Assembly (NCBI GenBank): GCA_002269645.1
Contig: NIVC01000910.1
Location: 198,944-262,943 of the forward strand
Direction: 5' to 3'
Length of the DNA: 64,000 nt
Origin: Macrostomum lignano
Lineage: Eukaryota
The notes under the pieces were generated by a model that had not been told where the DNA came from, searched no databases, and saw nothing but the letters and a program-made list of their open reading frames with translations. A program made the translations under genes and the position numbers. Each line of letters starts with the position of its first letter. Within the stretch, counting starts at the first letter, position 1. Shown one piece after another: positions 17,230-47,545 of this stretch.

Positions 17230-17667
17230 GTCCTCGGTCCCATCTACTACGTACTGGCCAGCGATCCCAATCCGGACTGGGCCGCCCACGCAGAGCCGGA
17301 CGCGTTCTTCTGTTTCACATCGCTAATGTCGGAGATTCGCGACCACTTCATCAAGGAGCTGGACTCCAGCCAGTCCGGAATCCAGGGCCGCATGCGCCAG
17401 TTCCAGGCCCGTCTGAGACTGCTGGACCTGCCGCTGCACAGTCGCCTCACTCAGCTGGGCTTGAAGTCGGAGTTCTACGCCTTCCGCTACCTCACCCTGC
17501 TGCTGTCTCAGGAGTTCCGCCTGCCCGACCTGCTGCGCGTGTGGGACTCCCTGCTGGCAGATCCACAGCGGTTCAACTTCCTGCTGGACGTCTGCTGCGC
17601 CATGCTGGTGCTTATCCGAGACCAGCTGCTGGCTGCCGACTTCTCCGACTGCATGCGGCTGGTGCAG
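17230..17667 (+). CDS. TBC1D13: TBC1D13 exon
   Basis: VLGPIYYVLASDPNPDWAAHAEPDAFFCFTSLMSEIRDHFIKELD...FYAFRYLTLLLSQEFRLPDLLRVWDSLLAD..RFNFLLDVCCAML. Acceptor ttgcag|GTC and donor CAG|gtgagc. Confidence 0.95.
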
Positions 17668-17701
17668 GTGAGCTGCCAACTGGGCTATGGAGTGCTGGTT
17701 G

Positions 17702-19666
17702 CTCAGTTGCTGGGCCAGCCTCCCAGATCCTCAGTTGCTGGGCCACAATCCCAGATTCTCAGTTGCTTGGCCTCAATCCCAGATCCTCAGCTTCGGGGCC
17801 AGCCTCCCTAGATCCTCAGTTGCTTGGACAGCCTCCCAGATCCTCAGCTTCGGAGCCAGCCTCCCAGATCCTCAGCTTCGGAGCCAGCCTCCCAGATCCT
17901 CAGTTGCTTGGACAGCCTCCCAGATCCTCAGTTACTGGGCCACCAGCCTCTCAGATCCTCAGTTGCTGGGCGAGGTTCCCAGATCCTCGGTTGCTGGGCC
18001 AGCCTCCCAGATCCTCAGTTGCTGGGCCAGCCTCTCAGATCCTCAGTTGCTGGGCGAGATTCCCAGATCCTCAGTTGCTGGGCCAGCCTCCCAGATCCCC
18101 AGTTTCTTGGCCAGCCTCCCAGATCCTGAGTTACTGGGCCACCAGCCTCCCAGATCCTCAGTTGCTGGGCCAGCCTCCCAGATCCTCAGTTGCTGGGCCA
18201 GCCTCCCAGATCCTTAGTTGCTGGGCCAGCCTCCCAGATCCTCAGTTGCTGGGCCAGCCTCCCAGATCCTTAGCTGCTGGGCCAGCCTCCCAGATCCTCA
18301 GTTGCTGGTCCAGCCTCCCAGATCCTTAGCTGCTGGGCCAGCCTTCCAGATCTTCGGTTGCTGGGCCAGCCTTCCAGATCCTCGGTTGCTGGGCCAGCCT
18401 CCCAGATCCCCAGTTTCTGGGCCAGCCTCCCAGATCCTGAGTTACTGGGCCACCAGCCTCCCAGATCCTCAGTTGCTGAGCCAGCCTCCCAGATCCTCGG
18501 TTGCTGGGCCAGCCTCCCAGATCCTCGGTTGCAGTGCCAGCCTCCCAGATCCTCAGTTGCTTGGACAGCCTCCCAGATCCTTAGTTGCTGGGCCAGCCTC
18601 CCAGATCCTCAGTTGCTGGTCCAGCCTCCCAGATCCTCGGTTGCTGAGCCAGCCTCCCAGATCCTCAGTTGCTGGGCCAGCCTCCCAGATCCTCGGTTGC
18701 AGTGCCAGCCTCCCAGAGTGTCAGTTGCTGGGCCAGCCTCCCAGATCCTCGGTTGCTGGGCCAGCCTCCCAGATCCTCGGTTGCTGGGCCAGCCTCCCAG
18801 ATCCTCGGTTGCTGGGCCAGCCTCCCAGATCCTCGGTTGCTGGGCCAGCCTCCCAGGTCCTCAGTTGCTGGGCCAGCCTCCCAGATCCTCGGTTGCTGGG
18901 CCAGCCTCCCAGATCCTCAGTTGCTGAGCCAGCCTCCCAGATCCTCAGTTGCTGGGCCAGCCTCCCAGATCCTCAGTTGCTGAGCCAGCCTCCCAGATCC
19001 TCAATTGCTGGGCCAGCCTCCCAGATCCTCGGTTGCTGTGCCAGCCTCCCAGATCCTCGGTTGCTGTGCCAGCCTCCCAGATCCTCAGTTGCTTGGACAG
19101 CCTCCCAGATCCTTAGTTGCTGGGCCAGCCTCCCAGATCCTCGGTTGCAGTGCCAGCCTCCCAGATCCTCAGTTGCTTGGACAGCCTCCCAGATCCTTAG
19201 TTGCTGGGCCAGCCTCCCAGATCCTCAGTTGCTGGTCCAGCCTCCCAGATCCTCGGTTGCTGGGCCAGCCTCCCAGATCCTCAGTTGCTGGGCCAGCCTC
19301 TCAGATCCTCGGTTGCAGTGCCAGCCTCCCAGATCCTCAGTTGCTGGGCCAGCCTCCCAGATCCTCAGTTGCTGGGCCACCCTCCCAGATCCTCAGTTGC
19401 TGGGCCAACCTCCCAGATCCTCAGTTGCTGGGCCAGCCTCCCAGATCCTCGGTTGCTGGGCCAGCCTCCCAGATCCTCAGTTGCTGGGCCAGCCTCCCAG
19501 GTCCTCAGTTGCTGGGCCAGCCTCCCAGATCCTCGGTTGCTGGGCCAGCCTCCCAGATCCTCAGTTGCTGGGCCAGCCTCCCAGATCCTCGGTTGCTGGG
19601 CCAGCCTCTCAGATCCCCAGTTGCTGGGCCAGCCTCCCAGATCCCCAGTTGCTGGGCCAGCCTCCC
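17702..19666 (+). repeat. 28-bp minisatellite (family A), about 70 copies
   Basis: Unit ctgggccagcctcccagatcctcagttg. Three units equal 28 codons, which explains the repetitive PQLLGQPPRSSVAGPASQILSCWASLPD ORFs in all three frames. Confidence 0.97.
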
Positions 19667-19715
19667 TCACCATCAAAAAGTTCAGCTATAACAATCATCA
19701 ACCCACCGCCCCCAG

Positions 19716-19913
19716 AATTACCCGTACGCGGACGTGCGCCAAATCCTGGCCAAGGCGCACGAGTTCTACACTCGCCGGCCCCACAACGCTGCCTCCGCTA
19801 GCGGCGCCCCGTCGAGCGCGCCAGGCCGTCCGGCAGGCGCGCTGGGCTCCTTCGACTCTCAGGATGGCGCTGTCGATGCCGAAGACTCGACTGCCAGCGA
19901 GGCGGGAATTTGA
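19716..19913 (+). CDS. TBC1D13: TBC1D13 last coding exon
   Basis: Acceptor cccccag|AAT. NYPYADVRQILAKAHEF parallels DYPITDVCQILQKAKEL and is followed by a low-complexity tail. TGA at 19911-19913. Confidence 0.88.
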   Translation, partial: NYPYADVRQILAKAHEFYTRRPHNAASASGAPSSAPGRPAGALGSFDSQDGAVDAEDSTASEAGI

Positions 19914-24434: not shown

Positions 24435-25150
24435 CTAGGGGTTGTTGAACGGGGAATTATCGATTAGATGTTGGTTGCATTTTTGATTATTGATCAACAG
24501 TGTCAAATCTCATCCAGAATTTTATCTAATCCACTATGAGAATTTGAGAATCTCAGCGATAAAGCAGCGCCCAAATCTCGCGCCACAGACCCTGGTTCGA
24601 TTCCGTGCTCAAACAAAACTTCCGTGCTTGGTAGGGGGTTGTCGTGGGGGGTTGTGGGACGATGTCGCCGAAGGCATTGTGCCACGGTCTCTATAACCCT
24701 CCTGAAAATATTTATTATTTTTTACCTGGAGATCTCATCTAATCTACATCAAATATGAGACTATTTTGTCTACCTTCGTAATCGTTTTGGCCCATTCAGC
24801 CCTATTCACTGAAAGCACCGTACAGGAATGATTTTACGTAGAGTTCGCACGCACCAGAACAGCGGAGCGGATCCAAATGCAAATCGCTTAGATGTGTGGT
24901 ATCAAATTTCAAACGGCGATACTAAAAGGAAGCGGCTGGCTCTTTGGTGCGGCCTGCGGTCTCAACAGTGCCATAAAAATACGCTCGAAATTTTGGAGCC
25001 AATTCGCTCTATCAGCTCGCTATAGTTACCGACCAATTATCTGCTGATGCAATCTGGCGCAAGTGCACTACTGGCTTTGCGTTTAATCAGCTTTGCTCAA
25101 CCTGATTCCGGCTCCAGATTCCGTCTCAGAATCTCGATACTCGCGCGCTC

Positions 25151-25508
25151 ACCTCCCAGATCCTCAGTTGCTGGGCCAGCCTCACAGATCCTCAGTTGCT
25201 GGGCCAGCCTCACAGATCCTCAGTTGCTGGGCCAGCCTCTCAGATCCTCAGTTTCTGGGCCACCTTCTCAGATCCTCAGTTGCTGGGCCACCCTCTCAGA
25301 TCCTCAGTTTCTGGGCCACCCTCTCAGATCCTCAGTTTCTGGGCCAGCCTCCCAGATCCTCAGTTGCTGGGCCAGCCTCCCAGATCCCCAGTTGCTGGGC
25401 CAGCCTCCCAGATCCTCAGTTGCTGGGCCAGAACCCCAGATTCCCAGTTGCTGGGCCAGCCTCCCAGATCCCCAGTTGCTGGGCCAGCCTCCCAGATCCT
25501 CAGTTGCC
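25151..25508 (+). repeat. 28-bp family A array in homeobox intron 2
   Basis: Same unit as 17702-19666, about 13 copies. Confidence 0.95.
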
Positions 25509-25569
25509 CATCTATATGTCATATGCCGCTTTGCACCGGATGCTGTGAGACACTCTCCAGCCCCCTCAC

Positions 25570-25816
25570 CTGGTAAAGGAAGTCCGGTGTCGCCTGGCCT
25601 TCGCCGAGTCGGCTCGCTTCTCCGTCGGCGACATCGCCGCCGCTGTTTGACCGTCGCCAACAAGCTGGCCCGACATCGCCGTGGCGTTTTGCTTTCCGTC
25701 CAGCATTCCAGCGCCATCATCATCTTCCAGTTCGTCATCTTCTGCGTCCTCGTTGTCTCCGTCGTCAGCTTGATTGTTGGCCGCTGTTGCTGGTGTTGCT
25801 GAAGGTCTGCGGCACG
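25570..25816 (-). CDS. Prrx-like homeobox gene, exon 2
   Basis: Acceptor aaatccacag|CG (phase 1). An acidic stretch is followed by AKARRHRTSFT, the homeodomain N-terminal arm. Donor AG|gtgagg (phase 2); phases fit both neighbouring exons. Confidence 0.88.
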
Positions 25817-28868: not shown

Positions 28869-30178
28869 CGAGGGTCACTCAGAAAGTTCTTAGCCTGAAC
28901 AAGAAAACAGCAACAAATGAACTAAAAAACGACTACAAGTGCTCAAAATACTCTCCACCGGCATTGATACAGGCTTGCATCCTGTGAAACCAGCTGTCGA
29001 AGCAATGCCGCCAATCCTCATCCCGGAGCTCCTCGATGATGTTTTTGAACTCATTTACAGCTTCTTCCGGTGAAGAAAAAACCTGGCCCTTCAGAATCTC
29101 CTTGCACTTCGGAAACAGAAAAAAGTCGCACGGTGCCAGGTCTGGACTGTAAGCAGGGTGAGTCATCAGCTGGACCCCACAGTCAGCCAGAAACTCCAGA
29201 GTTTGAGCCGCCGTGTGCGCGCTGGCGTTGTCGTGGTGCAGAAGCACCCCACGCATTCCGCACCTTGGGCGCCTCTGGCTCACAGCAGAAAAGACCTTGG
29301 GCAGGCAAACCGTTGTGTACCAGTCAGCGGTGACTGTCTGGCGATCTTCAAGTGAAACGGAAGCCACATGCCCAGTGCGCATGAAGAAACAGGCCACCAT
29401 CTGCTTGCCGACACTCCGGCTGCGTCGAAACTTTGTGGGGCTGTCCTCGTCTCCAAAGGTCCACATGGCTGACTGGCGCTTGCTTTCGGGGTCGTATTGA
29501 TAAATCCAGGTCTCATCGCCCGTGAGGATGTCCCAGATACGCCGGCTGGTCCCGGATTCGAATTTCTGCAGCATGAATCGGCACCAAGCCACCCTGGTGT
29601 CCTTCTGCACGTCCGACAGCTGATGGGGGATCCACCGGGAAGCCAGCTTCCGCACTCCAAGGTGTTCGTGCATAATGGCGTGCACACTCCCCGATCCAAT
29701 ACCGATCTCCTGCTGGATCTGCTGGTAGGTCACTCGCCGGTCAGCGGCAATCATGCTGGACACAGCGCAGATATTTTCTGGAGTCACTGCGTCACAGGGT
29801 CTCCCGGATCGATGTTCATCTTCGAGGCTTTCTCGACCTCGGCGAAACTCAGCGAACCAGTTTTTGACGGTTGCGTATGAAGGACATACATGGGTGAAAA
29901 CGTTCTGTAAAGTTTGATACGATTCGGCCGAAGACTTGCCTTGCTTGAAGTGCAAGTAAATCATTGCTCTGAAGTCGCGATTTTCCAGCTTCATTGTTGA
30001 ATTGAAGAACTCAGGGGGTGAACTGACTTTAACTCGCTGCAGTGGACTCAAAAGTGGCTGCTTCTGTTTGAAATTTTTGCTGCGATACTTTTAAAAGTTG
30101 GTCTTTACCATAGACAAATTTCATGCTTCTACGTCTCGTGGATCCTACTCAGGCTAAAGACTTTCTGAGTGACCCTCG
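28869..30178 (-). mobile_element. Full-length mariner (Tc1/mariner, DD34D) transposon, 1310 bp
   Basis: About 30-bp TIRs starting CGAGGGTCACTCAGAAAGT, with two mismatches further in. TA is duplicated at 28867-68 and 30179-80. The pre-insertion site ctttcTAttcccc equals one array unit. Confidence 0.97.
28933..29994 (-). CDS. Intact mariner transposase, 353 aa from ATG 29994
   Basis: HTH N-terminus, WIPHQL, TGDETW, LHHDNA and YSPDLAPCDF motifs; no internal stops. Confidence 0.95.
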   Translation of the reverse strand: MKLENRDFRAMIYLHFKQGKSSAESYQTLQNVFTHVCPSYATVKNWFAEFRRGRESLEDEHRSGRPCDAVTPENICAVSSMIAADRRVTYQQIQQEIGIGSGSVHAIMHEHLGVRKLASRWIPHQLSDVQKDTRVAWCRFMLQKFESGTSRRIWDILTGDETWIYQYDPESKRQSAMWTFGDEDSPTKFRRSRSVGKQMVACFFMRTGHVASVSLEDRQTVTADWYTTVCLPKVFSAVSQRRPRCGMRGVLLHHDNASAHTAAQTLEFLADCGVQLMTHPAYSPDLAPCDFFLFPKCKEILKGQVFSSPEEAVNEFKNIIEELRDEDWRHCFDSWFHRMQACINAGGEYFEHL

Positions 30179-33112: not shown

Positions 33113-34335
33113 TAAATGGGAACACTCCAACTCTTGGCTTCGGTTAATTACGCAGATAAGCACCTGTTTTTTTAATTTTCCTATTCACAAAATGACCCAG
33201 CTGTCCCCCCCTATAACATGGTGGAGAGAATATAAAAATAGTAAATCAAAGTCAATTGCATCATCACAGTATCGCATATCAGTGAATATTAGCTCATAAT
33301 TTATGCGAGTCTGTATAGCTGTTCAACCCCCCCATGTGCGCACCGAAGCATGGTCCCCAAGTAATTGACAAGTTTATACACATTCTCATTGCAATAACAA
33401 TTGCGTCATTGTCTGTGCGTTCGTCTATTTTTTGGGAAATTGCGTCGGTGAAAAAACCCCCAAAAAATCCACAACACAGTCTATCCCTTGGGGATACAAG
33501 GCCGCGAGGTCACATACTGGGAGAAAAATCCCCTTTATACTGGGGGATTGATTTTTTGGGATATACTCGTAGGCGAATACCGTAGGCCTCTCTAACTTGT
33601 CGCAAAACAACAACCGAACGAGAATGGAATGGAACCGATCATCTTTCACCCCGCTCCCCCCAAGGAGGATAACAGAAAACACTTAATGATGCTTGTAATT
33701 TGCTTTAGACCCTGTCTGCGCCAACCCCCCTGGACTAACCCTGGAGGCATTTTCGGAACAATTGCAGCCATCTGGGGATCTTCCAGTCCGCGGCAGTCTG
33801 CAACGCCAAGGGACCCTAAAGCCCCACTTTGCCGTGGCCGCTGCCCCCTCACTCCGTGTGGCTCTCCTCCTTCTATCATCTATCCGCAAAAAAAACGTTT
33901 CCCGTCGGTCGTTTTCGTTTCGTCGCCCAAGTCTTCCATCTCTCTTCTCTCTCTCTCTCCACCCTCTTTCTCGGTGTCTTCTCTCGGTATTTTTACAGCA
34001 GCCGGTCCCAGCGCCGCTCCCTAGTTAGACTGGGGGGCGCCGCCTGTCAGAACCTGTTAGTGCCGGCGGGCCCTGACATGCTGCGACTCCCCGGCCCGAT
34101 GCGGCACTGCGGTGATGCAGCAGAGCTACTCCCGTCTGGCTCCCCGCCAGCCTCTCTCCGACCCCCCGCCTCTCCGCTCCCAATAGCTAGGGGATTTCTT
34201 TGTTCGAATATTCTTTCCCCCGGAGTTGCCGAACGATGGATTGCGGGGCCGGGAACTGTAGCGTGGGAAACTCTGCCAACCGGAGGGTCGGGACATTCTG
34301 CTGCTCCCAGTTTAGATTGAGCGAGGCGGGCCGAC

Positions 34336-34762
34336 CCAGGATCTGGGAGGCTGTCCAAGCAACTGAGGATCTGGGAGGCTGGCCCAGCAACTGAGGATCT
34401 GGGAGGCTGTCCAAGCAACTGAGGATCTGGGAGGCTGTCCAAGCAACTGAGGATCTGGGAGGCTGTCCAAGCAACTGAGGATCTGGGAGGCTGTCCAAGC
34501 AACTGAGGATCTGGGAGGCTGTCCCAGCAACTGAGGACCTGGGAGGCTGTCCCAGTAACTGAGGATCTGGAAGGCTGTCCCAGCAACTGAGGATCTGGGA
34601 GGCTGGCCCAGCAACTGAGGATCTGGGAGGCTGGCCCAGCAACTGAGGATCTGGGAGGCTGGCCCAGCAACTGAGGATCTGGGAGGGTGGATCAGGACCT
34701 GAAGATCTGAGAGAGTGGACCAGCAACTGAGGATTTGGGAGACTGGCCCAGCAGCTGAGCAT
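34336..34762 (-). repeat. 28-bp family A array, inverted
   Basis: caactgaggatctgggaggctg(g/t)cc(c/a)ag units. Confidence 0.95.
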
Positions 34763-35050
34763 GTGGGAGGGTGGCGGCGGCCCTGTCTGCATTCGAAGCG
34801 GGTCCATGGAAAATGGTTAAAGCAGCAGAACACCGCAAATAACGTCACGCCTGGCTTCTTATCTTCAAGCAATAGGGGAATGCTCAACTGCTGGGCTATT
34901 TTTGAAGCAAAAAGCTATCTTTCCCTAAGCGGAAGCGAAAAGTGATCAGAGCTGATTCAACCAACTGTCTATGGCCCAAGTCAAACAAGGCTCCCATTAA
35001 GCCGCAACCAAGAAGCACGCCATCAGAGGTGGCGGAATCGAAGCGCAGGA

Positions 35051-44080: not shown

Positions 44081-44475
44081 CTGGGTGGGGAAGGCGGGAG
44101 GCATTGCGTTAGTCATGGTTCAGCTTCATTATGGTGAGCAAAGTGCTTAACAGTGAGGGCTGGTCCAGCAACTGAGGATCTGGGAGGCTGGCCCAGCAAC
44201 TGAGGATCTGGGAGGCTGGCCCAGCAACTGAGGATCTGGGAGGCTGGCCCAGCAACTGAGGATATGGGAGGCTGGTCCAGCAACTGAGGATCTGAGAGGC
44301 TGGTGGCCCAGTAACTGAGGATCTGGGAGGCTGGCCCAGAAACTGGGGATCTGGGAGGCTGGCCCAGCAACGGAGGATCTGGAAGGCTGTCCAAGCAACT
44401 GAGGATCTAGGAGGCTGTCCAAGCAACTGAGGATCTGGGAGGCTGGCCCCGAAGCTGAGGATCTGGGATTGTGGC

Positions 44476-44762
44476 CATACATGCGCAACCTCCAAAATTC
44501 GGTCGGCCGTGCGACTTAGTTTTAACAAAAATGCAATGTGGTTTTTGGCCAAAAATGCGAAAAAAGCCTAAATCAAAATTAACGCAACTCTGGGTAAACG
44601 GCTGGAGTAACCATCACTGTCTTATTAAACCAAAATGCCCCGTTAGCTACTTAGTACTACTTCTTGGGTGTTTTTTCGGGTGGGCATTTTTGCGACTTCC
44701 TTGGTTGGCCGCCAAATCGGTCGGCAGGATCGGCCGACTCGGCCGACTGTTGCGCATGTATG
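44476..44762. mobile_element. hAT-like MITE, 287 bp
   Basis: Perfect 14-bp TIRs CATACATGCGCAAC / GTTGCGCATGTATG. 8-bp TSD ATTGTGGC at 44468-44475 and 44763-44770. Subterminal CGGCCGAC repeats. Confidence 0.85.
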
Positions 44763-44874
44763 ATTGTGGCCAAGCAACTGAGGATCTGGGATTCTGGCCC
44801 AGTAACTGAGGATCTGAGATTGTAGGAAAATAAACGTCAACAAAAACATAAAAAGTAGACTTTGTTTAATTCTA

Positions 44875-44912
44875 GCCAACGCGTTTCGTCAAACACAAGA
44901 TGTCGTCAGGGC
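44875..44912 (-). ncRNA. Minimal type I hammerhead ribozyme motif, copy with a stem II mismatch
   Basis: Minus strand reads gcc-CTGACGA-catcttgtgtttgac-GAAA-cgcgtt-ggc. Confidence 0.65.
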
Positions 44913-44974
44913 AAATTCAATCAGCCTAAGATCACACCACCATCTGGAAAAAAAAATAAATAGACACGGCTCTG

Positions 44975-45894
44975 GGGCCCATGCTATAGATTTAAGAGCA
45001 AAGAGTAAGGAGTTAGGAGTCAGGAGTGCTCCTAGCAAGGAGCGAATCGATTTTGTGTGCTATAGAGTTCAAGAATCAAGAGTTAGGAGCTAGGAGTTGT
45101 TTTAAGGAGTGCAGCATAGGAGTGAGGAGGAGTTCTAAGGAGTGTAAGGCGATTGGCTAAGGAGTCTGCCAATCTGCGTGCTATATTAAACTCCTAAATG
45201 AACGCACCTTAAGGAGTAATTATAGGAGCAATTCGTGAATTCAAACAATGCAAGCAAACCAAAAAGTTGCGTTTGTTAAAGCGATTGCGGCTCGAAAGGA
45301 CGTGCACCTTTTCGGTGCCTTTTCGCCAACAATAACAAAAGCACTCAAGATTGAAATGTGGAGAGAGGTCATCCTTGAATGTCGCCAAGAGTTGATTCTC
45401 ATTGAGCCGAAATCGTGACACAGTATTATATTCTTCAAAAAAGTTAATCCTCTGCTTAAATTGTCTGGGTCGCCGATCATTAGCTCCCTCATCGTCCGAG
45501 CCTAGCTAGCTCACTGTCCGAAAACATGAAAAAAGAAACGAATCACACGATCCTACTATAACCTAAGAGTGAAATTTGGCCCTTGAAGTCTTAACTAGGA
45601 GTTAGGAGCTAGAAATGAGTTTCGCTCCTTCTATAGGACACGCACTCCTAAAACTCACTCCTAAACGGCAATTCCTAGCTCCTAGCTCCTACGCTCCGCT
45701 CCTTATTCTATAGCACGCGACAAACCTTAATGAGGTCTCCTAAATTCACCAAGGAGTATCCTAACGTCCTTAAGGAGCCTCCTAGCTCTTAAAATTTACT
45801 CTTGATTCAATAGCACAGAAAAGCCAGCTAGGAGCTAGGAGTTAGGACACTCTTAAGGATTTAGGAGTTAAAGAGTATTCTATAGCACGGGCCC
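44975..45894 (+). mobile_element. PIF/Harbinger-like non-autonomous element, 920 bp
   Basis: TIRs GGGCCC(A/G)TGCTATAG. 3-bp TSD CTG at 44972-74 and 45895-97. Many TAGGAG/CTCCTA subterminal repeats. Internal Myb/SANT-like ORF. Confidence 0.8.
45248..45418 (+). pseudogene. Truncated Myb/SANT-like DNA-binding ORF (56 aa) of the Harbinger element
   Basis: MQANQKVAFVKAIAARKDVHLFGAFSPTITKALKIEMWREVILECRQELILIEPKS resembles the xKDVLFGxFSxxITxxxKxxxWxEI pattern of Harbinger-associated Myb/SANT proteins (by recall). It is below the ORF-track length cutoff. Confidence 0.6.
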
Positions 45895-46115
45895 CTGCTC
45901 ACAGTACTCTTAGCTCACAATGTGTACTTAGCTCAATGTGTGAGCTAAGAGTACTGTGAGAAGAGCCGTGCCTATTTATTTATTTTTTCTCTCTCTCACT
46001 TTGTTGTGTACTTGGCACTTTCTTAATTCTACCGGACTGTTTTGACCCGCCTCTGGACTGTACAGTGATTTTTGCTTAAATATATTGGTGTTGTGATCTT
46101 AGGTTGATTGAATTT

Positions 46116-46153
46116 GCCCTGACGACGTCTTGTGTTTGACGAAACGCGTTGGC
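46116..46153 (+). ncRNA. Minimal type I hammerhead ribozyme motif, intact-looking copy
   Basis: gcc-CTGACGA-c-GTC-ttgtgttt-GAC-GAAA-CGCGTT-ggc: conserved CUGAnGA and GAAA core, stem I gcc/ggc, stem II gtc/gac, palindromic ACGCGT helix III and a GUU cleavage triplet. Confidence 0.75.
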
Positions 46154-47194
46154 TAGAATTAAACAAAGTCTACTTTTTATGTTTTTGTTGACGTTTATTT
46201 TCCTACTATTTGTTAGACGAGCTACACTTCCACAATCTGGGATTGTGGCCCAGAAACTGAGGATCTGGGAGGCTGGCCCAGCAACTGAGGATCTTAGTGG
46301 ACTGTTGAGTCAGAGTTTTTAAAGATTTCTAAAACAAAAAATGGTCTGCTATTCCAACTGATAATTATGATAACGAATATCTGCTATTAAATCGACATGG
46401 TCAATGATGTGACAAAAGAGACAAAATACAATTCCAGAGATTATTCTCAAAGTATAGGTATTTTCTTGTCTCAACTCGCGCGTATGAAAAAAGTTGAATG
46501 AGTAATGAGTCTAGCTCGTAGCAGCCATCTTAAAAACTTTTTTTACCAGGAATTTTCAGGATTAAAATGATGAGGATTAAGATAAAAAATTGAGCATTAA
46601 ATAGTTAAATGAAAAATTTTTAAGAGTGCCAATTGGCACCCTGATTTTGGACCCACAATCTTGACGAAAAAATCCAGTGTACAGTTAATAATTAAGATAT
46701 AATCGTACAGAAGGTTAGAGTGAGGAATTATTGCAGATGTGATCGGCTACGGACATGGTCCTCAATTTTTCTGCTCCCGCAGTCTCCAAGGTAGTGTGCT
46801 CAAGATGCATCCTCATACACTTGGCCCCAGCCACCCACGCTTCATTACTCGCATCGATCGCATGAACTGGACTCGCTGAATCAATCTAGGAGAGGAGAGC
46901 AGTCAGATCAGGCACACTGCAAGTGCATCACATTTTTAGTTTAGGCCTTAGAATCTTTCAGATTGAAAATCTGAAAGATCTGACATCTGGGGATCGTCGA
47001 TCGACACACTGAATTGCCACCCTCCTCAGGTATTGAGCCACTGCCTCCCTCCTAGATTCTCATCCTTAGTTGCTAGGCCATCTTCTTAGATTCCCTGTTG
47101 CTAGGCCATCTTCCCAGATTCCCTGCTGCTAGGCCATTTTCCCAGATTCCCTGTTGCTAGGCCTTCTTTCCAGATTCCCTGTTGTTAGGCCATC

Positions 47195-47545
47195 CTCCCA
47201 GACCCTCAGTCGCTGGGCCAGCCTCCCAGATCCTCAGTTGTTGGGCCAGCCTCCCAGATCCTCAGTTGCTGGGCCAGCCTCTCAGATCCTCAGTTGCTGG
47301 GCCAGCCTCCCAGATCCTCAGTCGCTGGGCCAGCCTCCCAGATCTTCAGCTGCTGGGCCGGCCTCCCAGATCCTCAGTTGCTGGGCCAGCCTCTCAGATC
47401 CTCAGTTGCTGGGCCAGCCTCGCAGATCCTCAGTTGCTGGGCCGGCCTCCCAGATCCTCAGTTGCTGGGCCAGCCTTCCAGATCCTCAGTTGCTGAGCCA
47501 GCCTCCCAGATCTTCAGCTGCTGGGCCGGCCTCCCAGTTGCTGGG
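47195..47545 (+). repeat. 28-bp family A array (with a degenerate extension from about 47040)
   Basis: Same unit as 17702-19666. Confidence 0.93.

What the first reader, a model, noticed from the sequence alone, without database searches (positions are those of the whole stretch)
44822..46235. Foldback element carrying two inverted minimal hammerhead ribozymes inside Nck intron 2
Removing the Harbinger leaves a roughly 500-bp near-palindrome: 120-bp outer arms, an inner hairpin (aaataaatag(a/g)cacggctct-ctcacagtactcttagctcaca) and one arm with a 29-bp extension and about 100 bp extra. Each arm contains CUGACGA-c-stemII-GAAA-CGCGUU with a 3-bp (extendable) stem I. Minimal type I hammerheads with a palindromic helix III (here ACGCGT) are characteristic of Penelope-like pLTRs and are thought to cleave as dimers. 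A non-coding, inverted two-ribozyme cassette in a host intron could produce self-cleaved RNAs on either strand, a long dsRNA hairpin (small-RNA source), or a retrozyme-like non-autonomous unit.
Basis: partly seen in the sequence, partly recalled or inferred. Interest (0 to 1): 0.8.

Follow-up and report, generated by a model that had tools for sequence, protein, structure and literature searches.

The report
Inverted dead Penelope-like retroelement tails
The near-palindrome in intron 2 of the flatworm Nck gene is most likely an ordinary dead insertion of a Penelope-like retroelement: two 5'-truncated tail ends joined head to head, each carrying the element's minimal hammerhead motif, rather than a new foldback or two-ribozyme device.

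Summary
Two 121-124 nt arms (97% complementary) and an inner hairpin are split by a 0.9 kb nested TIR element. One side has a 28 nt extension and a 98 nt extra segment. Each arm carries a minimal type I hammerhead motif, on opposite strands. The locus is intron 2 of Nck in Macrostomum lignano.

The anatomy matches what is published for Penelope-like element (PLE) insertions:
- Both hammerheads point outward, so each outer end is an element 3' end.
- The predicted cut site lies 56 nt from one end and 84 nt from the other. The difference is a one-sided 28 nt "tail".
- A 10-12 bp target-site duplication flanks the whole block. Removing the block restores the 28 bp minisatellite phase exactly.

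A weevil PLE I fetched has the same layout (56 and 86 nt, a 30 nt one-sided tail, a 10-11 bp duplication). A model built from PLE hammerheads ranks the two arms first and second in the window (E 0.024 and 1.5).

The motif is weak: helix II is only 3 bp. The copy that is sense to Nck has lost the G10.1-C11.1 pair. Any transcript is predicted to bury the motif in a long duplex. A second copy of the locus has deleted one arm.

No other family copy and no PLE ORF from this genome could be reached.

The parts
44812..44823 (+). Left target-site duplication ATCTGAGATTGT (10-12 bp; the last GT overlaps the element end)
   Evidence: The matching copy is ATCTGGGATTGT at 46235-46246.
44822..44973 (-). 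Left 5'-truncated PLE copy, outer part (sense on the - strand). It ends at the short-form 3' terminus ...TTCCTAC and lacks about 90 nt that the right copy has.
   Evidence: Inverted repeats I1 and I2; alignment A3.
44875..44912 (-). Left minimal hammerhead motif, sense to Nck. The core is intact, but G10.1 is changed to A, so helix II keeps only 2 pairs. The predicted cut lies between 44878 and 44877, 56 nt from the end.
   Evidence: Fails the descriptor. Model R1 gives 11.1 bits, E 1.5, rank 2 in the window.
44974..45895 (.). Nested non-autonomous TIR element (PIF/Harbinger-like by its TIR GGGCCCATGCTATAG and a 3 bp CTG duplication), inserted into the left copy
   Evidence: Inverted repeat I13; sequence; no Pfam support.
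45896..45919 (-). Inner end of the left copy (left arm of the central hairpin)
   Evidence: Inverted repeat I3.
45920..45938 (.). 19 nt spacer at the head-to-head junction (10 nt in the second locus copy, L001)
45939..46206 (+). Right 5'-truncated PLE copy (sense on the + strand), including the 98 nt segment 45988-46085 that the left copy lacks
   Evidence: Conserved in L001.
46116..46153 (+). Right minimal type I hammerhead motif, antisense to Nck. The predicted cut lies after U17 at 46150. It is 56 nt from the short terminus and 84 nt from the long terminus.
   Evidence: Only descriptor hit in the window. Model R1 gives 18.1 bits, E 0.024-0.039, the top hit. Identical in L001.
46207..46234 (+). 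One-sided 28 nt 'tail' TATTTGTTAGACGAGCTACACTTCCACA with an AC-rich end
   Evidence: Compare the 30 nt one-sided tail in weevil PLE locus L002 and the 30-40 bp tails described in PMC8557442 and PMC11167929.
46235..46246 (+). Right target-site duplication ATCTGGGATTGT
   Evidence: Removing 44824-46246 restores four in-phase 28 bp minisatellite units.
44762..44821 (+). Flanking 28 bp minisatellite that served as the target (continues at 46235-46294)
   Evidence: Tandem Repeats Finder.

Best explanation
The block 44822-46234 is one dead-on-arrival insertion of a Penelope-like retroelement (PLE), or of a non-autonomous relative that uses the same machinery. It sits in a 28 bp minisatellite in intron 2 of Macrostomum lignano Nck.

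It consists of two 5'-truncated 3' ends of the element joined head to head. Each 3' end therefore faces outward and carries the element's pLTR hammerhead.

Inferred origin: the element's GIY-YIG endonuclease nicked both target strands 10-12 bp apart. Each exposed 3'-OH then primed reverse transcription of element RNA. One start was at the nearer of two internal start sites (56 nt past the hammerhead cut). The other was at the farther site (84 nt past the cut), which gives the one-sided 28 nt tail. The two short cDNAs were joined at a 10-19 nt spacer, or one cDNA snapped back on itself.

Later events: a TIR element inserted into the left copy, and the left copy lost about 90 nt.

Present activity is most likely none. 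Neither copy has a same-sense partner for the dimer that a palindromic helix III requires. The Nck-sense copy has lost the G10.1-C11.1 pair. Any read-through RNA is predicted to fold the arms into a ~120 bp duplex.

Shown here: the anatomy, the motif, the comparison with other PLE loci, and the age and decay of the insertion. Inferred only: the priming mechanism and the lack of cleavage.
For: 1. Motif. All conserved core nucleotides are present, plus three of the four non-descriptor hallmarks of PLE min-HHRs listed in PMC4209133: an unpaired nucleotide between A9 and 10.1, G10.1-C11.1 (right copy), and a palindromic 15.2-16.2.
2. Model test. A covariance model built from four PLE-linked hammerheads (Anolis, weevil, two from lamprey) recovers a held-out PLE hammerhead at E 1.6e-5. 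It ranks the two arms first and second in the window, at 18.1 bits (E 0.024) and 11.1 bits (E 1.5).
3. Orientation and spacing. Both motifs face outward. The cut-to-end distance is 56 nt on both sides, plus a 28 nt tail on one side only.
4. Comparators. Weevil PLE locus L002 shows outward-facing hammerheads on opposite strands, distances of 56 and 86 nt, a 30 nt tail on one end only, and a 10-11 bp duplication. A lamprey inverted copy ends 91 nt past the cut. Published Anolis Poseidon has its cut at +26, reverse-transcription starts at +111-118 (85-92 nt past the cut), and a tail equal to the stretch between the two start sites (PMC11167929).
5. Published mechanism and anatomy. The Poseidon protein cleaves and extends both target strands in vitro. 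Adjacent inverted 5'-truncated copies, one-sided 30-40 bp tails and microsatellite targets are described as typical PLE features (PMC8557442).
6. Single event. A 10-12 bp duplication brackets the whole block including the tail, and removing the block restores the minisatellite phase.
7. Age and lack of constraint. A second copy of the locus (L001, 93-97% identical flanks) keeps the right copy, tail and duplication but has deleted the left arm, with the breakpoint at the palindrome centre.
Against: - No RT or GIY-YIG coding sequence is present in the window, L001 or L005, about 115 kb of M. lignano DNA.
- No second, independent copy of this sequence was found there or in the metagenome and viral collections. 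The link to an autonomous PLE in this genome is therefore untested.
- Helix II is only 3 bp, against 6-8 bp in the PLE hammerheads described and fetched.
- The model score is modest and its E-value calibration is rough.
- Both copies are truncated at almost the same point. Two independent priming events do not predict that, and it fits a snap-back mechanism better.
- The tail region shows no significant stem-loop.
Confidence: 0.8

Rival explanations
1. The source was not an autonomous PLE. It was a short non-autonomous, retrozyme-like or SINE-like derivative of a PLE pLTR, mobilised in trans by PLE reverse transcriptase. The insertion anatomy would be the same, so this is a variant of the main explanation rather than an alternative to it.
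For: No coding sequence lies within the roughly 230 nt upstream of the hammerhead in the right copy. Animal retrozymes have been proposed to be non-autonomous derivatives of PLE pLTRs (bioRxiv 10.64898/2026.07.22.740005).
Against: 5' truncation alone explains the missing ORF. No direct repeat of the post-cut sequence occurs within the copy, so any unit would have to exceed about 290 nt. There is no tandem arrangement here.
Confidence: 0.25
2. It is a foldback or MITE-type DNA transposon with ~120 bp terminal inverted repeats that happens to contain, or captured, a hammerhead-bearing fragment.
For: The inverted repeats are long and nearly perfect, and the element is non-coding. The same minisatellite hosts other TIR elements.
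Against: The inverted repeat stops 28 nt short of the right boundary defined by the duplication. No duplication directly flanks the inverted-repeat ends. The palindrome runs through to a central hairpin instead of enclosing unique internal sequence. The hammerhead-to-end spacing and the one-sided tail reproduce PLE loci.
Confidence: 0.06
3. The host has taken it over as a functional RNA element. Either an intronic hairpin yields small RNAs, or an intronic hammerhead cleaves Nck pre-mRNA, as the conserved intronic hammerheads of amniotes are proposed to do.
For: The Nck-sense transcript is predicted to form a ~120 bp duplex. One hammerhead copy is in the sense orientation of Nck.
Against: The Nck-sense copy is the one that lost G10.1-C11.1. 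The second locus copy deleted that whole arm and kept only the antisense copy, so the cassette is not conserved. A TIR element sits between the arms.
Confidence: 0.05
4. The hammerhead-like motif is a chance match inside an unrelated palindromic duplication.
For: The relaxed descriptor is expected about once per 6 Mb of random sequence. Helix II has only 3 bp. Rfam finds nothing.
Against: The motif lies at 56 and 84 nt from the insertion ends, facing outward, with the PLE-specific extra nucleotide and palindromic helix III. It is also the only significant hit of an independent PLE-hammerhead model in the window. A chance motif falling in such a position is very unlikely.
Confidence: 0.04

Closest known systems
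Penelope-like element insertions with an adjacent inverted 5'-truncated copy and a one-sided 30-40 bp tail (Evgen'ev & Arkhipova 2005; Craig et al. 2021, PMC8557442; Frangieh et al. 2024, PMC11167929)
   Same: Outward-facing 3' ends, 5' truncation, a one-sided tail (28 nt), two alternative 3' termini at fixed distances from the hammerhead cut (56 and 84 nt), a 10-12 bp target duplication, and a repeat-array target.
   Different: Both copies are short (about 190 and 290 nt) and truncated at nearly the same point, which makes an almost perfect palindrome. The usual picture is a short inverted copy next to a long or full-length copy. No ORF is present. The host species, M. lignano, has no PLE hammerhead described in the papers I could search.
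Minimal type I hammerheads of metazoan PLE pLTRs (Cervera & De la Pena 2014, PMC4209133), including the dual motifs on opposite strands 100-700 bp apart reported in Schistosoma mansoni
   Same: CUGANGA...GAAA core, an unpaired nucleotide after A9, G10.1-C11.1, palindromic helix III with no loop, a short open helix I, and the opposite-strand pairing of two motifs.
   Different: Helix II is 3 bp instead of 6-8 bp. The helix III palindrome is ACGCGU (6 nt) rather than ACGU. One copy carries a disabling G10.1A change.
Sitophilus oryzae PLE locus fetched here (L002, PPTJ02000576.1)
   Same: Hammerheads on opposite strands facing outward, 56 nt from the cut to the short terminus, a 30 nt tail on one end only, and a 10-11 bp duplication.
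   Different: L002 has a 544 nt inverted copy next to a full-length copy with an RT-containing ORF (Pfam RVT_1). Its hammerhead has a 6 bp helix II. There is no sequence similarity to the flatworm element outside the core.
Metazoan non-LTR retrozymes (Cervera & de la Pena 2020, PMC7229834)
   Same: Non-coding, carry a type I hammerhead, and are probably PLE-related.
   Different: Retrozymes are direct tandem repeats that yield circular RNAs. This locus is an inverted pair with no direct repeat.
Foldback and long-TIR MITE DNA transposons
   Same: Long inverted arms and no coding capacity.
   Different: Asymmetric termini, a duplication that includes the 28 nt tail, and retroelement-type 3'-end anatomy.

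Membership tests
Hammerhead ribozyme, PLE minimal type I variant | Conserved core C3 U4 G5 A6 N7 G8 A9 / G12 A13 A14 / A15.1-U16.1 / H17 | tested here: met
   Both arms: CUGACGA ... GAAA ... U-U.
Hammerhead ribozyme, PLE minimal type I variant | Unpaired nucleotide between A9 and 10.1 (PMC4209133) | tested here: met
   An extra C is present in both arms. The same feature is present in all six control PLE hammerheads.
Hammerhead ribozyme, PLE minimal type I variant | Conserved G10.1-C11.1 pair closing helix II | tested here: inconclusive
   Present in the right copy and in L001. Replaced by an A-C mismatch in the left copy, which is the one sense to Nck.
Hammerhead ribozyme, PLE minimal type I variant | Palindromic 15.2-16.2 with no helix III loop (dimer-type helix III) | tested here: met
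   ACGCGU.
Hammerhead ribozyme, PLE minimal type I variant | Long helix II (6-8 bp), typical of metazoan PLE min-HHRs | tested here: not met
   Only 3 bp (GUC/GAC) with an 8 nt loop. The controls have 6-7 bp.
Hammerhead ribozyme, PLE minimal type I variant | Scores against a covariance model of PLE hammerheads | tested here: met
   Model R1: 18.1 bits, E 0.024-0.039, the top hit in the window. The held-out control scores 31.2 bits. This is a weak pass, and E-values are rough.
Hammerhead ribozyme, PLE minimal type I variant | Match to the Rfam hammerhead families | tested here: not met
   No hit at E<=10. The same is true of genuine PLE hammerheads, so this test does not discriminate.
Hammerhead ribozyme, PLE minimal type I variant | Self-cleavage, as a dimer or with protein assistance | not testable with these tools
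   Needs in vitro transcription. The monomer's minimum-energy fold is an alternative hairpin (-15.0 kcal/mol against -4.1 for the hammerhead fold).
Hammerhead ribozyme, PLE minimal type I variant | A genome-wide family of copies with covariation in the helices | not testable with these tools
   No other copy in about 115 kb of M. lignano DNA. The genome itself is not searchable here.
Penelope-like element (insertion of) | ORF with a telomerase-like RT and a GIY-YIG endonuclease | tested here: not met
   tblastn with Anolis Poseidon protein finds nothing in the window, L001 or L005. This is expected for 5'-truncated copies, so it does not exclude PLE origin.
Penelope-like element (insertion of) | Hammerhead in the pLTR close to the element's 3' terminus, with two alternative termini that differ by a 30-40 nt tail | tested here: met
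   56 and 84 nt here, 56 and 86 nt in L002, 91 nt in L003, and 85-92 nt published for Poseidon.
Penelope-like element (insertion of) | 5' truncation with an adjacent inverted copy | tested here: met
   Also seen in 2 of the 3 control PLE loci.
Penelope-like element (insertion of) | A target-site duplication brackets the whole unit including the tail | tested here: met
   ATCTG(A/G)GATTGT on both sides. The in-silico empty site restores the 28 bp phase.
Penelope-like element (insertion of) | The same pLTR found next to a PLE ORF elsewhere in the genome | not testable with these tools
Foldback / long-TIR DNA transposon | Symmetric termini with a fixed-length duplication directly flanking the TIRs | tested here: not met
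   A 28 nt asymmetry at the right end, and no duplication next to the inverted-repeat ends.
Metazoan non-LTR retrozyme | Direct tandem repeats of a hammerhead-bearing unit | tested here: not met
   Only an inverted pair. No direct repeat of the unit was found.

The most novel reading that the evidence does not exclude
The intronic palindrome is transcribed with Nck and processed into small RNAs that silence the parent PLE family, making it a hairpin-RNA locus born from a retroelement's own insertion mechanism. Alternatively, its sense hammerhead still nicks Nck pre-mRNA. Either way a routine PLE insertion by-product would be a recurrent source of regulatory dsRNA.
Probability: 0.05. Interest if true: 0.5.

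Novelty: new member of a known kind. Interest (0 to 1): 0.2.

Why it matters
Mainly as correct annotation. An eye-catching 'two-ribozyme foldback' turns out to be the standard scar of Penelope-like retrotransposition.

Two modest points of value follow.
- It documents a hammerhead-bearing PLE-type element in Macrostomum lignano. No paper in the searched library describes one.
- The cut-to-terminus spacing (56 and 84 nt) and the one-sided tail agree with a weevil locus (56 and 86 nt), a lamprey locus (91 nt) and the in vitro start sites of lizard Poseidon (85-92 nt). That genomic agreement across phyla supports the view that PLE reverse transcription starts at two fixed internal sites and can be primed from both target strands.

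The second locus copy also shows how such palindromes decay, by deleting one arm from the centre.

Tried and rejected
- Rfam at gathering score and at E<=10 gave no hammerhead. The only hits were sub-threshold miRNA models matching the central hairpin, which are generic hairpin matches. I set this negative aside because Rfam also misses all six control PLE hammerheads.
- Searches for further copies found none: within the window, in L001 and L005, and in the metagenome and viral collections by exact pattern.
- Look-ups of small ORFs inside the arm and of the window's mariner ORF returned nothing on record.
- A protein search with Anolis Poseidon RT-EN listed only the best 120 of 4603 hits, none from Macrostomum.
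- A search with the window's mariner, meant to sample more M. lignano DNA, gave no hit above 65% identity.
- I could not evaluate the double-hammerhead energy, because the dimer is a pseudoknot in concatenated notation.
- The idea of an AC-rich stem-loop in the tail, as in Poseidon, is not supported. Folding is no better than for shuffled sequences.
- The Myb-like reading of the 56 aa ORF in the nested element is not supported by Pfam.
- The open frame that follows the hammerhead (MARIKQSLLFMFLLTFIFLLFVRRATLPQ...) is too short to mean anything, so I did not pursue it.
- Literature searches linking Macrostomum with Penelope or hammerheads found nothing relevant.
Full report
**What is there.**
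- Two arms, 44819-44942 and 46086-46209, are 97% complementary over 124 nt. The exact pairing ends at 44822 and 46206.
- Inside them a second pair (44948-44973 with 45962-45987) and a central hairpin (45895-45919 with 45939-45963, 19 nt spacer) continue the palindrome.
- The left half is interrupted at 44974-45895 by a non-coding element. It has TIRs GGGCCCATGCTATAG and a CTG duplication. Calling it Harbinger rests only on those features, because Pfam gives nothing for its ORFs.
- Without that element the block is 491 bp.
- The right half has 98 nt (45988-46085) and a terminal 28 nt (46207-46234) that the left half lacks.

**Organism and gene.** The Nck first coding exon is 99% identical to Macrostomum lignano BOX15_Mlig025024g1. 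tblastn places the coding exons at 52707-51667, 51077-~50697 and 44086-43853 on the - strand.

**The hammerhead motif.** On the + strand at 46116-46153 the sequence reads GCC-CUGACGA-C-GUC-UUGUGUUU-GAC-GAAA-CGCG-U-U-GGC.
- Every conserved core position is present. Helix I is open (type I), with 3 bp plus 4 more after a small internal loop. Helix II has 3 bp.
- Helix III is the loop-less palindrome ACGCGU, which can only pair between two molecules.
- The mirror copy is on the - strand at 44875-44912. It has A for G at 10.1, which breaks the closing pair of helix II.
- A relaxed descriptor of my own finds exactly one hit in the window and 0.01 per random 64 kb. That is improbable for one window, but about a hundred such hits would be expected genome-wide. 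The motif alone proves little.
- Rfam finds no hammerhead. Rfam also misses all six hammerheads that sit beside PLE ORFs in three control loci, so that result carries no weight.

- The second and fourth are met in both arms. The third is met in the right arm. The first cannot be tested here.
- The same authors also report dual min-HHRs on opposite strands 100-700 bp apart in Schistosoma, which is the arrangement seen here.
- The clear departure is helix II: 3 bp here against 6-8 bp.
- I built a covariance model from four PLE-linked hammerheads: Anolis Poseidon from the supplement of PMC11167929, one from weevil locus L002, and two from lamprey locus L003. It finds a held-out PLE hammerhead in L004 at 31.2 bits, E 1.6e-5.
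- With filters off it ranks the two arms first (18.1 bits, E 0.024) and second (11.1 bits, E 1.5) in the whole window.

**Anatomy of the insertion.** This is the stronger evidence.
- Both motifs face outward, so each outer boundary is the 3' end of a sense copy and the two 5' ends meet in the middle.
- The predicted cut (after 46150, and after 44878 on the other strand) lies 56 nt from the end of the inverted repeat on both sides. The right side then runs 28 nt further.
- A 12 bp direct repeat, ATCTG(A/G)GATTGT, flanks the block only if those 28 nt are included. Removing 44824-46246 restores four consecutive in-phase units of the 28 bp minisatellite. The whole inverted structure, tail included, therefore came in at one staggered break.

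**Published and fetched comparators.**
- Craig et al. (PMC8557442) describe PLE insertions as strongly 5'-truncated. They often have an inverted 5'-truncated copy adjacent, a 30-40 bp tail at one end only, and a bias for microsatellites.
- Frangieh et al. (PMC11167929) show that Poseidon protein cleaves and extends both target strands. Reverse transcription starts at two internal RNA sites, the farther at +111-118, which is 85-92 nt past the hammerhead cut at +26. The tail is the stretch between the two sites.
- Weevil locus L002 has hammerheads on opposite strands facing outward. A 544 nt inverted copy sits next to a full-length copy. The cut is 56 nt from the short terminus and 86 nt from the long one. 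A 30 nt tail is present on one end only, and the duplication is 10-11 bp.
- In lamprey locus L003 an inverted copy ends 91 nt past the cut.
- The flatworm values, 56 and 84 nt, fit this series.

**Most likely origin (inferred).** A PLE ribonucleoprotein nicked both strands of the minisatellite 10-12 bp apart. The top-strand end (...GATT or ...GATTGT) primed a cDNA from the nearer start site, and the bottom-strand end primed one from the farther site. Both syntheses aborted after roughly 280 nt and the ends were joined.

The near-equal truncation points are not predicted by two independent events. A snap-back of one cDNA is an alternative that I cannot exclude.

Whether the RNA came from an autonomous PLE or from a short non-autonomous derivative is open. 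No RT or GIY-YIG sequence and no further copy is present in the 115 kb of M. lignano DNA I could reach. I exhausted the protein searches without reaching a Macrostomum PLE.

**Present function.** I think it has none, for four reasons.
- The two motifs are on opposite strands, so a single transcript holds one sense and one antisense copy. That pair cannot form the dimeric helix III. It is predicted to zip into a duplex across the whole arm, burying the core.
- The isolated monomer also prefers an alternative hairpin (-15.0 kcal/mol against -4.1 for the hammerhead fold).
- The copy that is sense to Nck is the one with the G10.1A change.
- A second copy of the locus (L001, NIVC01000152.1, flanks 93-97% identical) keeps the right copy, its hammerhead, the tail and the duplication. 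It has lost about 1.3 kb, from inside the neighbouring MITE to the palindrome centre. The gap carries a 32 nt filler that copies adjacent sequence in inverted orientation.

The insertion therefore predates the split of the two locus copies. The two-arm cassette is not conserved, and the surviving motif in L001 is antisense to Nck. A role as a dsRNA or small-RNA source cannot be excluded without expression data.

**Verdict.** The hammerhead-PLE link is supported. The 'foldback element', 'two-ribozyme cassette' and 'retrozyme-like' readings are not the best description. This is a new member of a known kind: an inverted pair of 5'-truncated Penelope-like tails with the family's characteristic tail. 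Interest is low. The main gap is the untested link to a PLE ORF elsewhere in the M. lignano genome, which a single genome-wide BLAST would settle.

Noticed in passing
window 44476-44762: A second small TIR element sits in the same 28 bp minisatellite. Its 14 nt TIRs are CATACATGCGCAAC / GTTGCGCATGTATG, and it has an 8-9 bp duplication ATTGTGGC(C), which is hAT-like by length. It is truncated in the second locus copy, L001.
   Followed up: partly
L001 17095-17135 (corresponds to window 44629-~45917): The second copy of the Nck locus has deleted one whole arm of the palindrome plus the nested element. The breakpoint is at the palindrome centre. A 32 nt filler contains an inverted copy of the adjacent gactgtcttattaa, which looks like templated end-joining repair.
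   Followed up: partly
window 28933-29994 (- strand): An intact 353 aa mariner-type transposase ORF (Pfam HTH and DDE domains on its relatives). The best database relatives are only 65% identical, and no gene with this product is on record.
   Followed up: partly
L002 4770-4780 (Sitophilus oryzae PPTJ02000576.1): The 5' end of the full-length weevil PLE copy coincides, within 2 nt, with the predicted hammerhead cleavage site. This fits a ribozyme-processed RNA having served as the template.
   Followed up: no
window 46127-46134; L003 7420-7464 and 8025-8065: Loop II of the flatworm motif (UUGUGUUU) resembles loop II of two lamprey PLE hammerheads (UUGUGUU, UUGUG). This could be a conserved loop or a coincidence.
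   Followed up: no
protein P0066: A protein labelled 'hypothetical protein, partial [Escherichia coli]' is 62% identical to the Anolis Poseidon RT and carries RVT_1 plus the animal HTH domain. It is probably eukaryotic contamination in a bacterial assembly.
   Followed up: no
window 17500-19900, 25050-25600, 34050-34900, 44154-44468, 47062-47537: The same 28 bp minisatellite (GGCCCAGNAACTGAGGATCTGGGAGGCT) recurs in both orientations across the window and produces long spurious ORFs (...PPRSSVAGPASQILSCWASLPDPQLLGQ...). Several other minisatellites (periods of about 21, 34 and 35 bp) fill much of 20-41 kb and 48-51 kb.
   Followed up: no
window 45880-45977: Sub-threshold Rfam miRNA-precursor hits (mir-H2, mir-586, mir-253 and others, 24-37 bits against gathering scores of 65-93) fall on both strands of the central hairpin. 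They are generic hairpin matches, not evidence of a miRNA.
   Followed up: yes
window 46200-46240 and 44815-44830: The two alternative 3' termini have similar last bases (...TTTTCCTAC and ...CTTCCACA). This may reflect a short motif at both reverse-transcription start sites.
   Followed up: no
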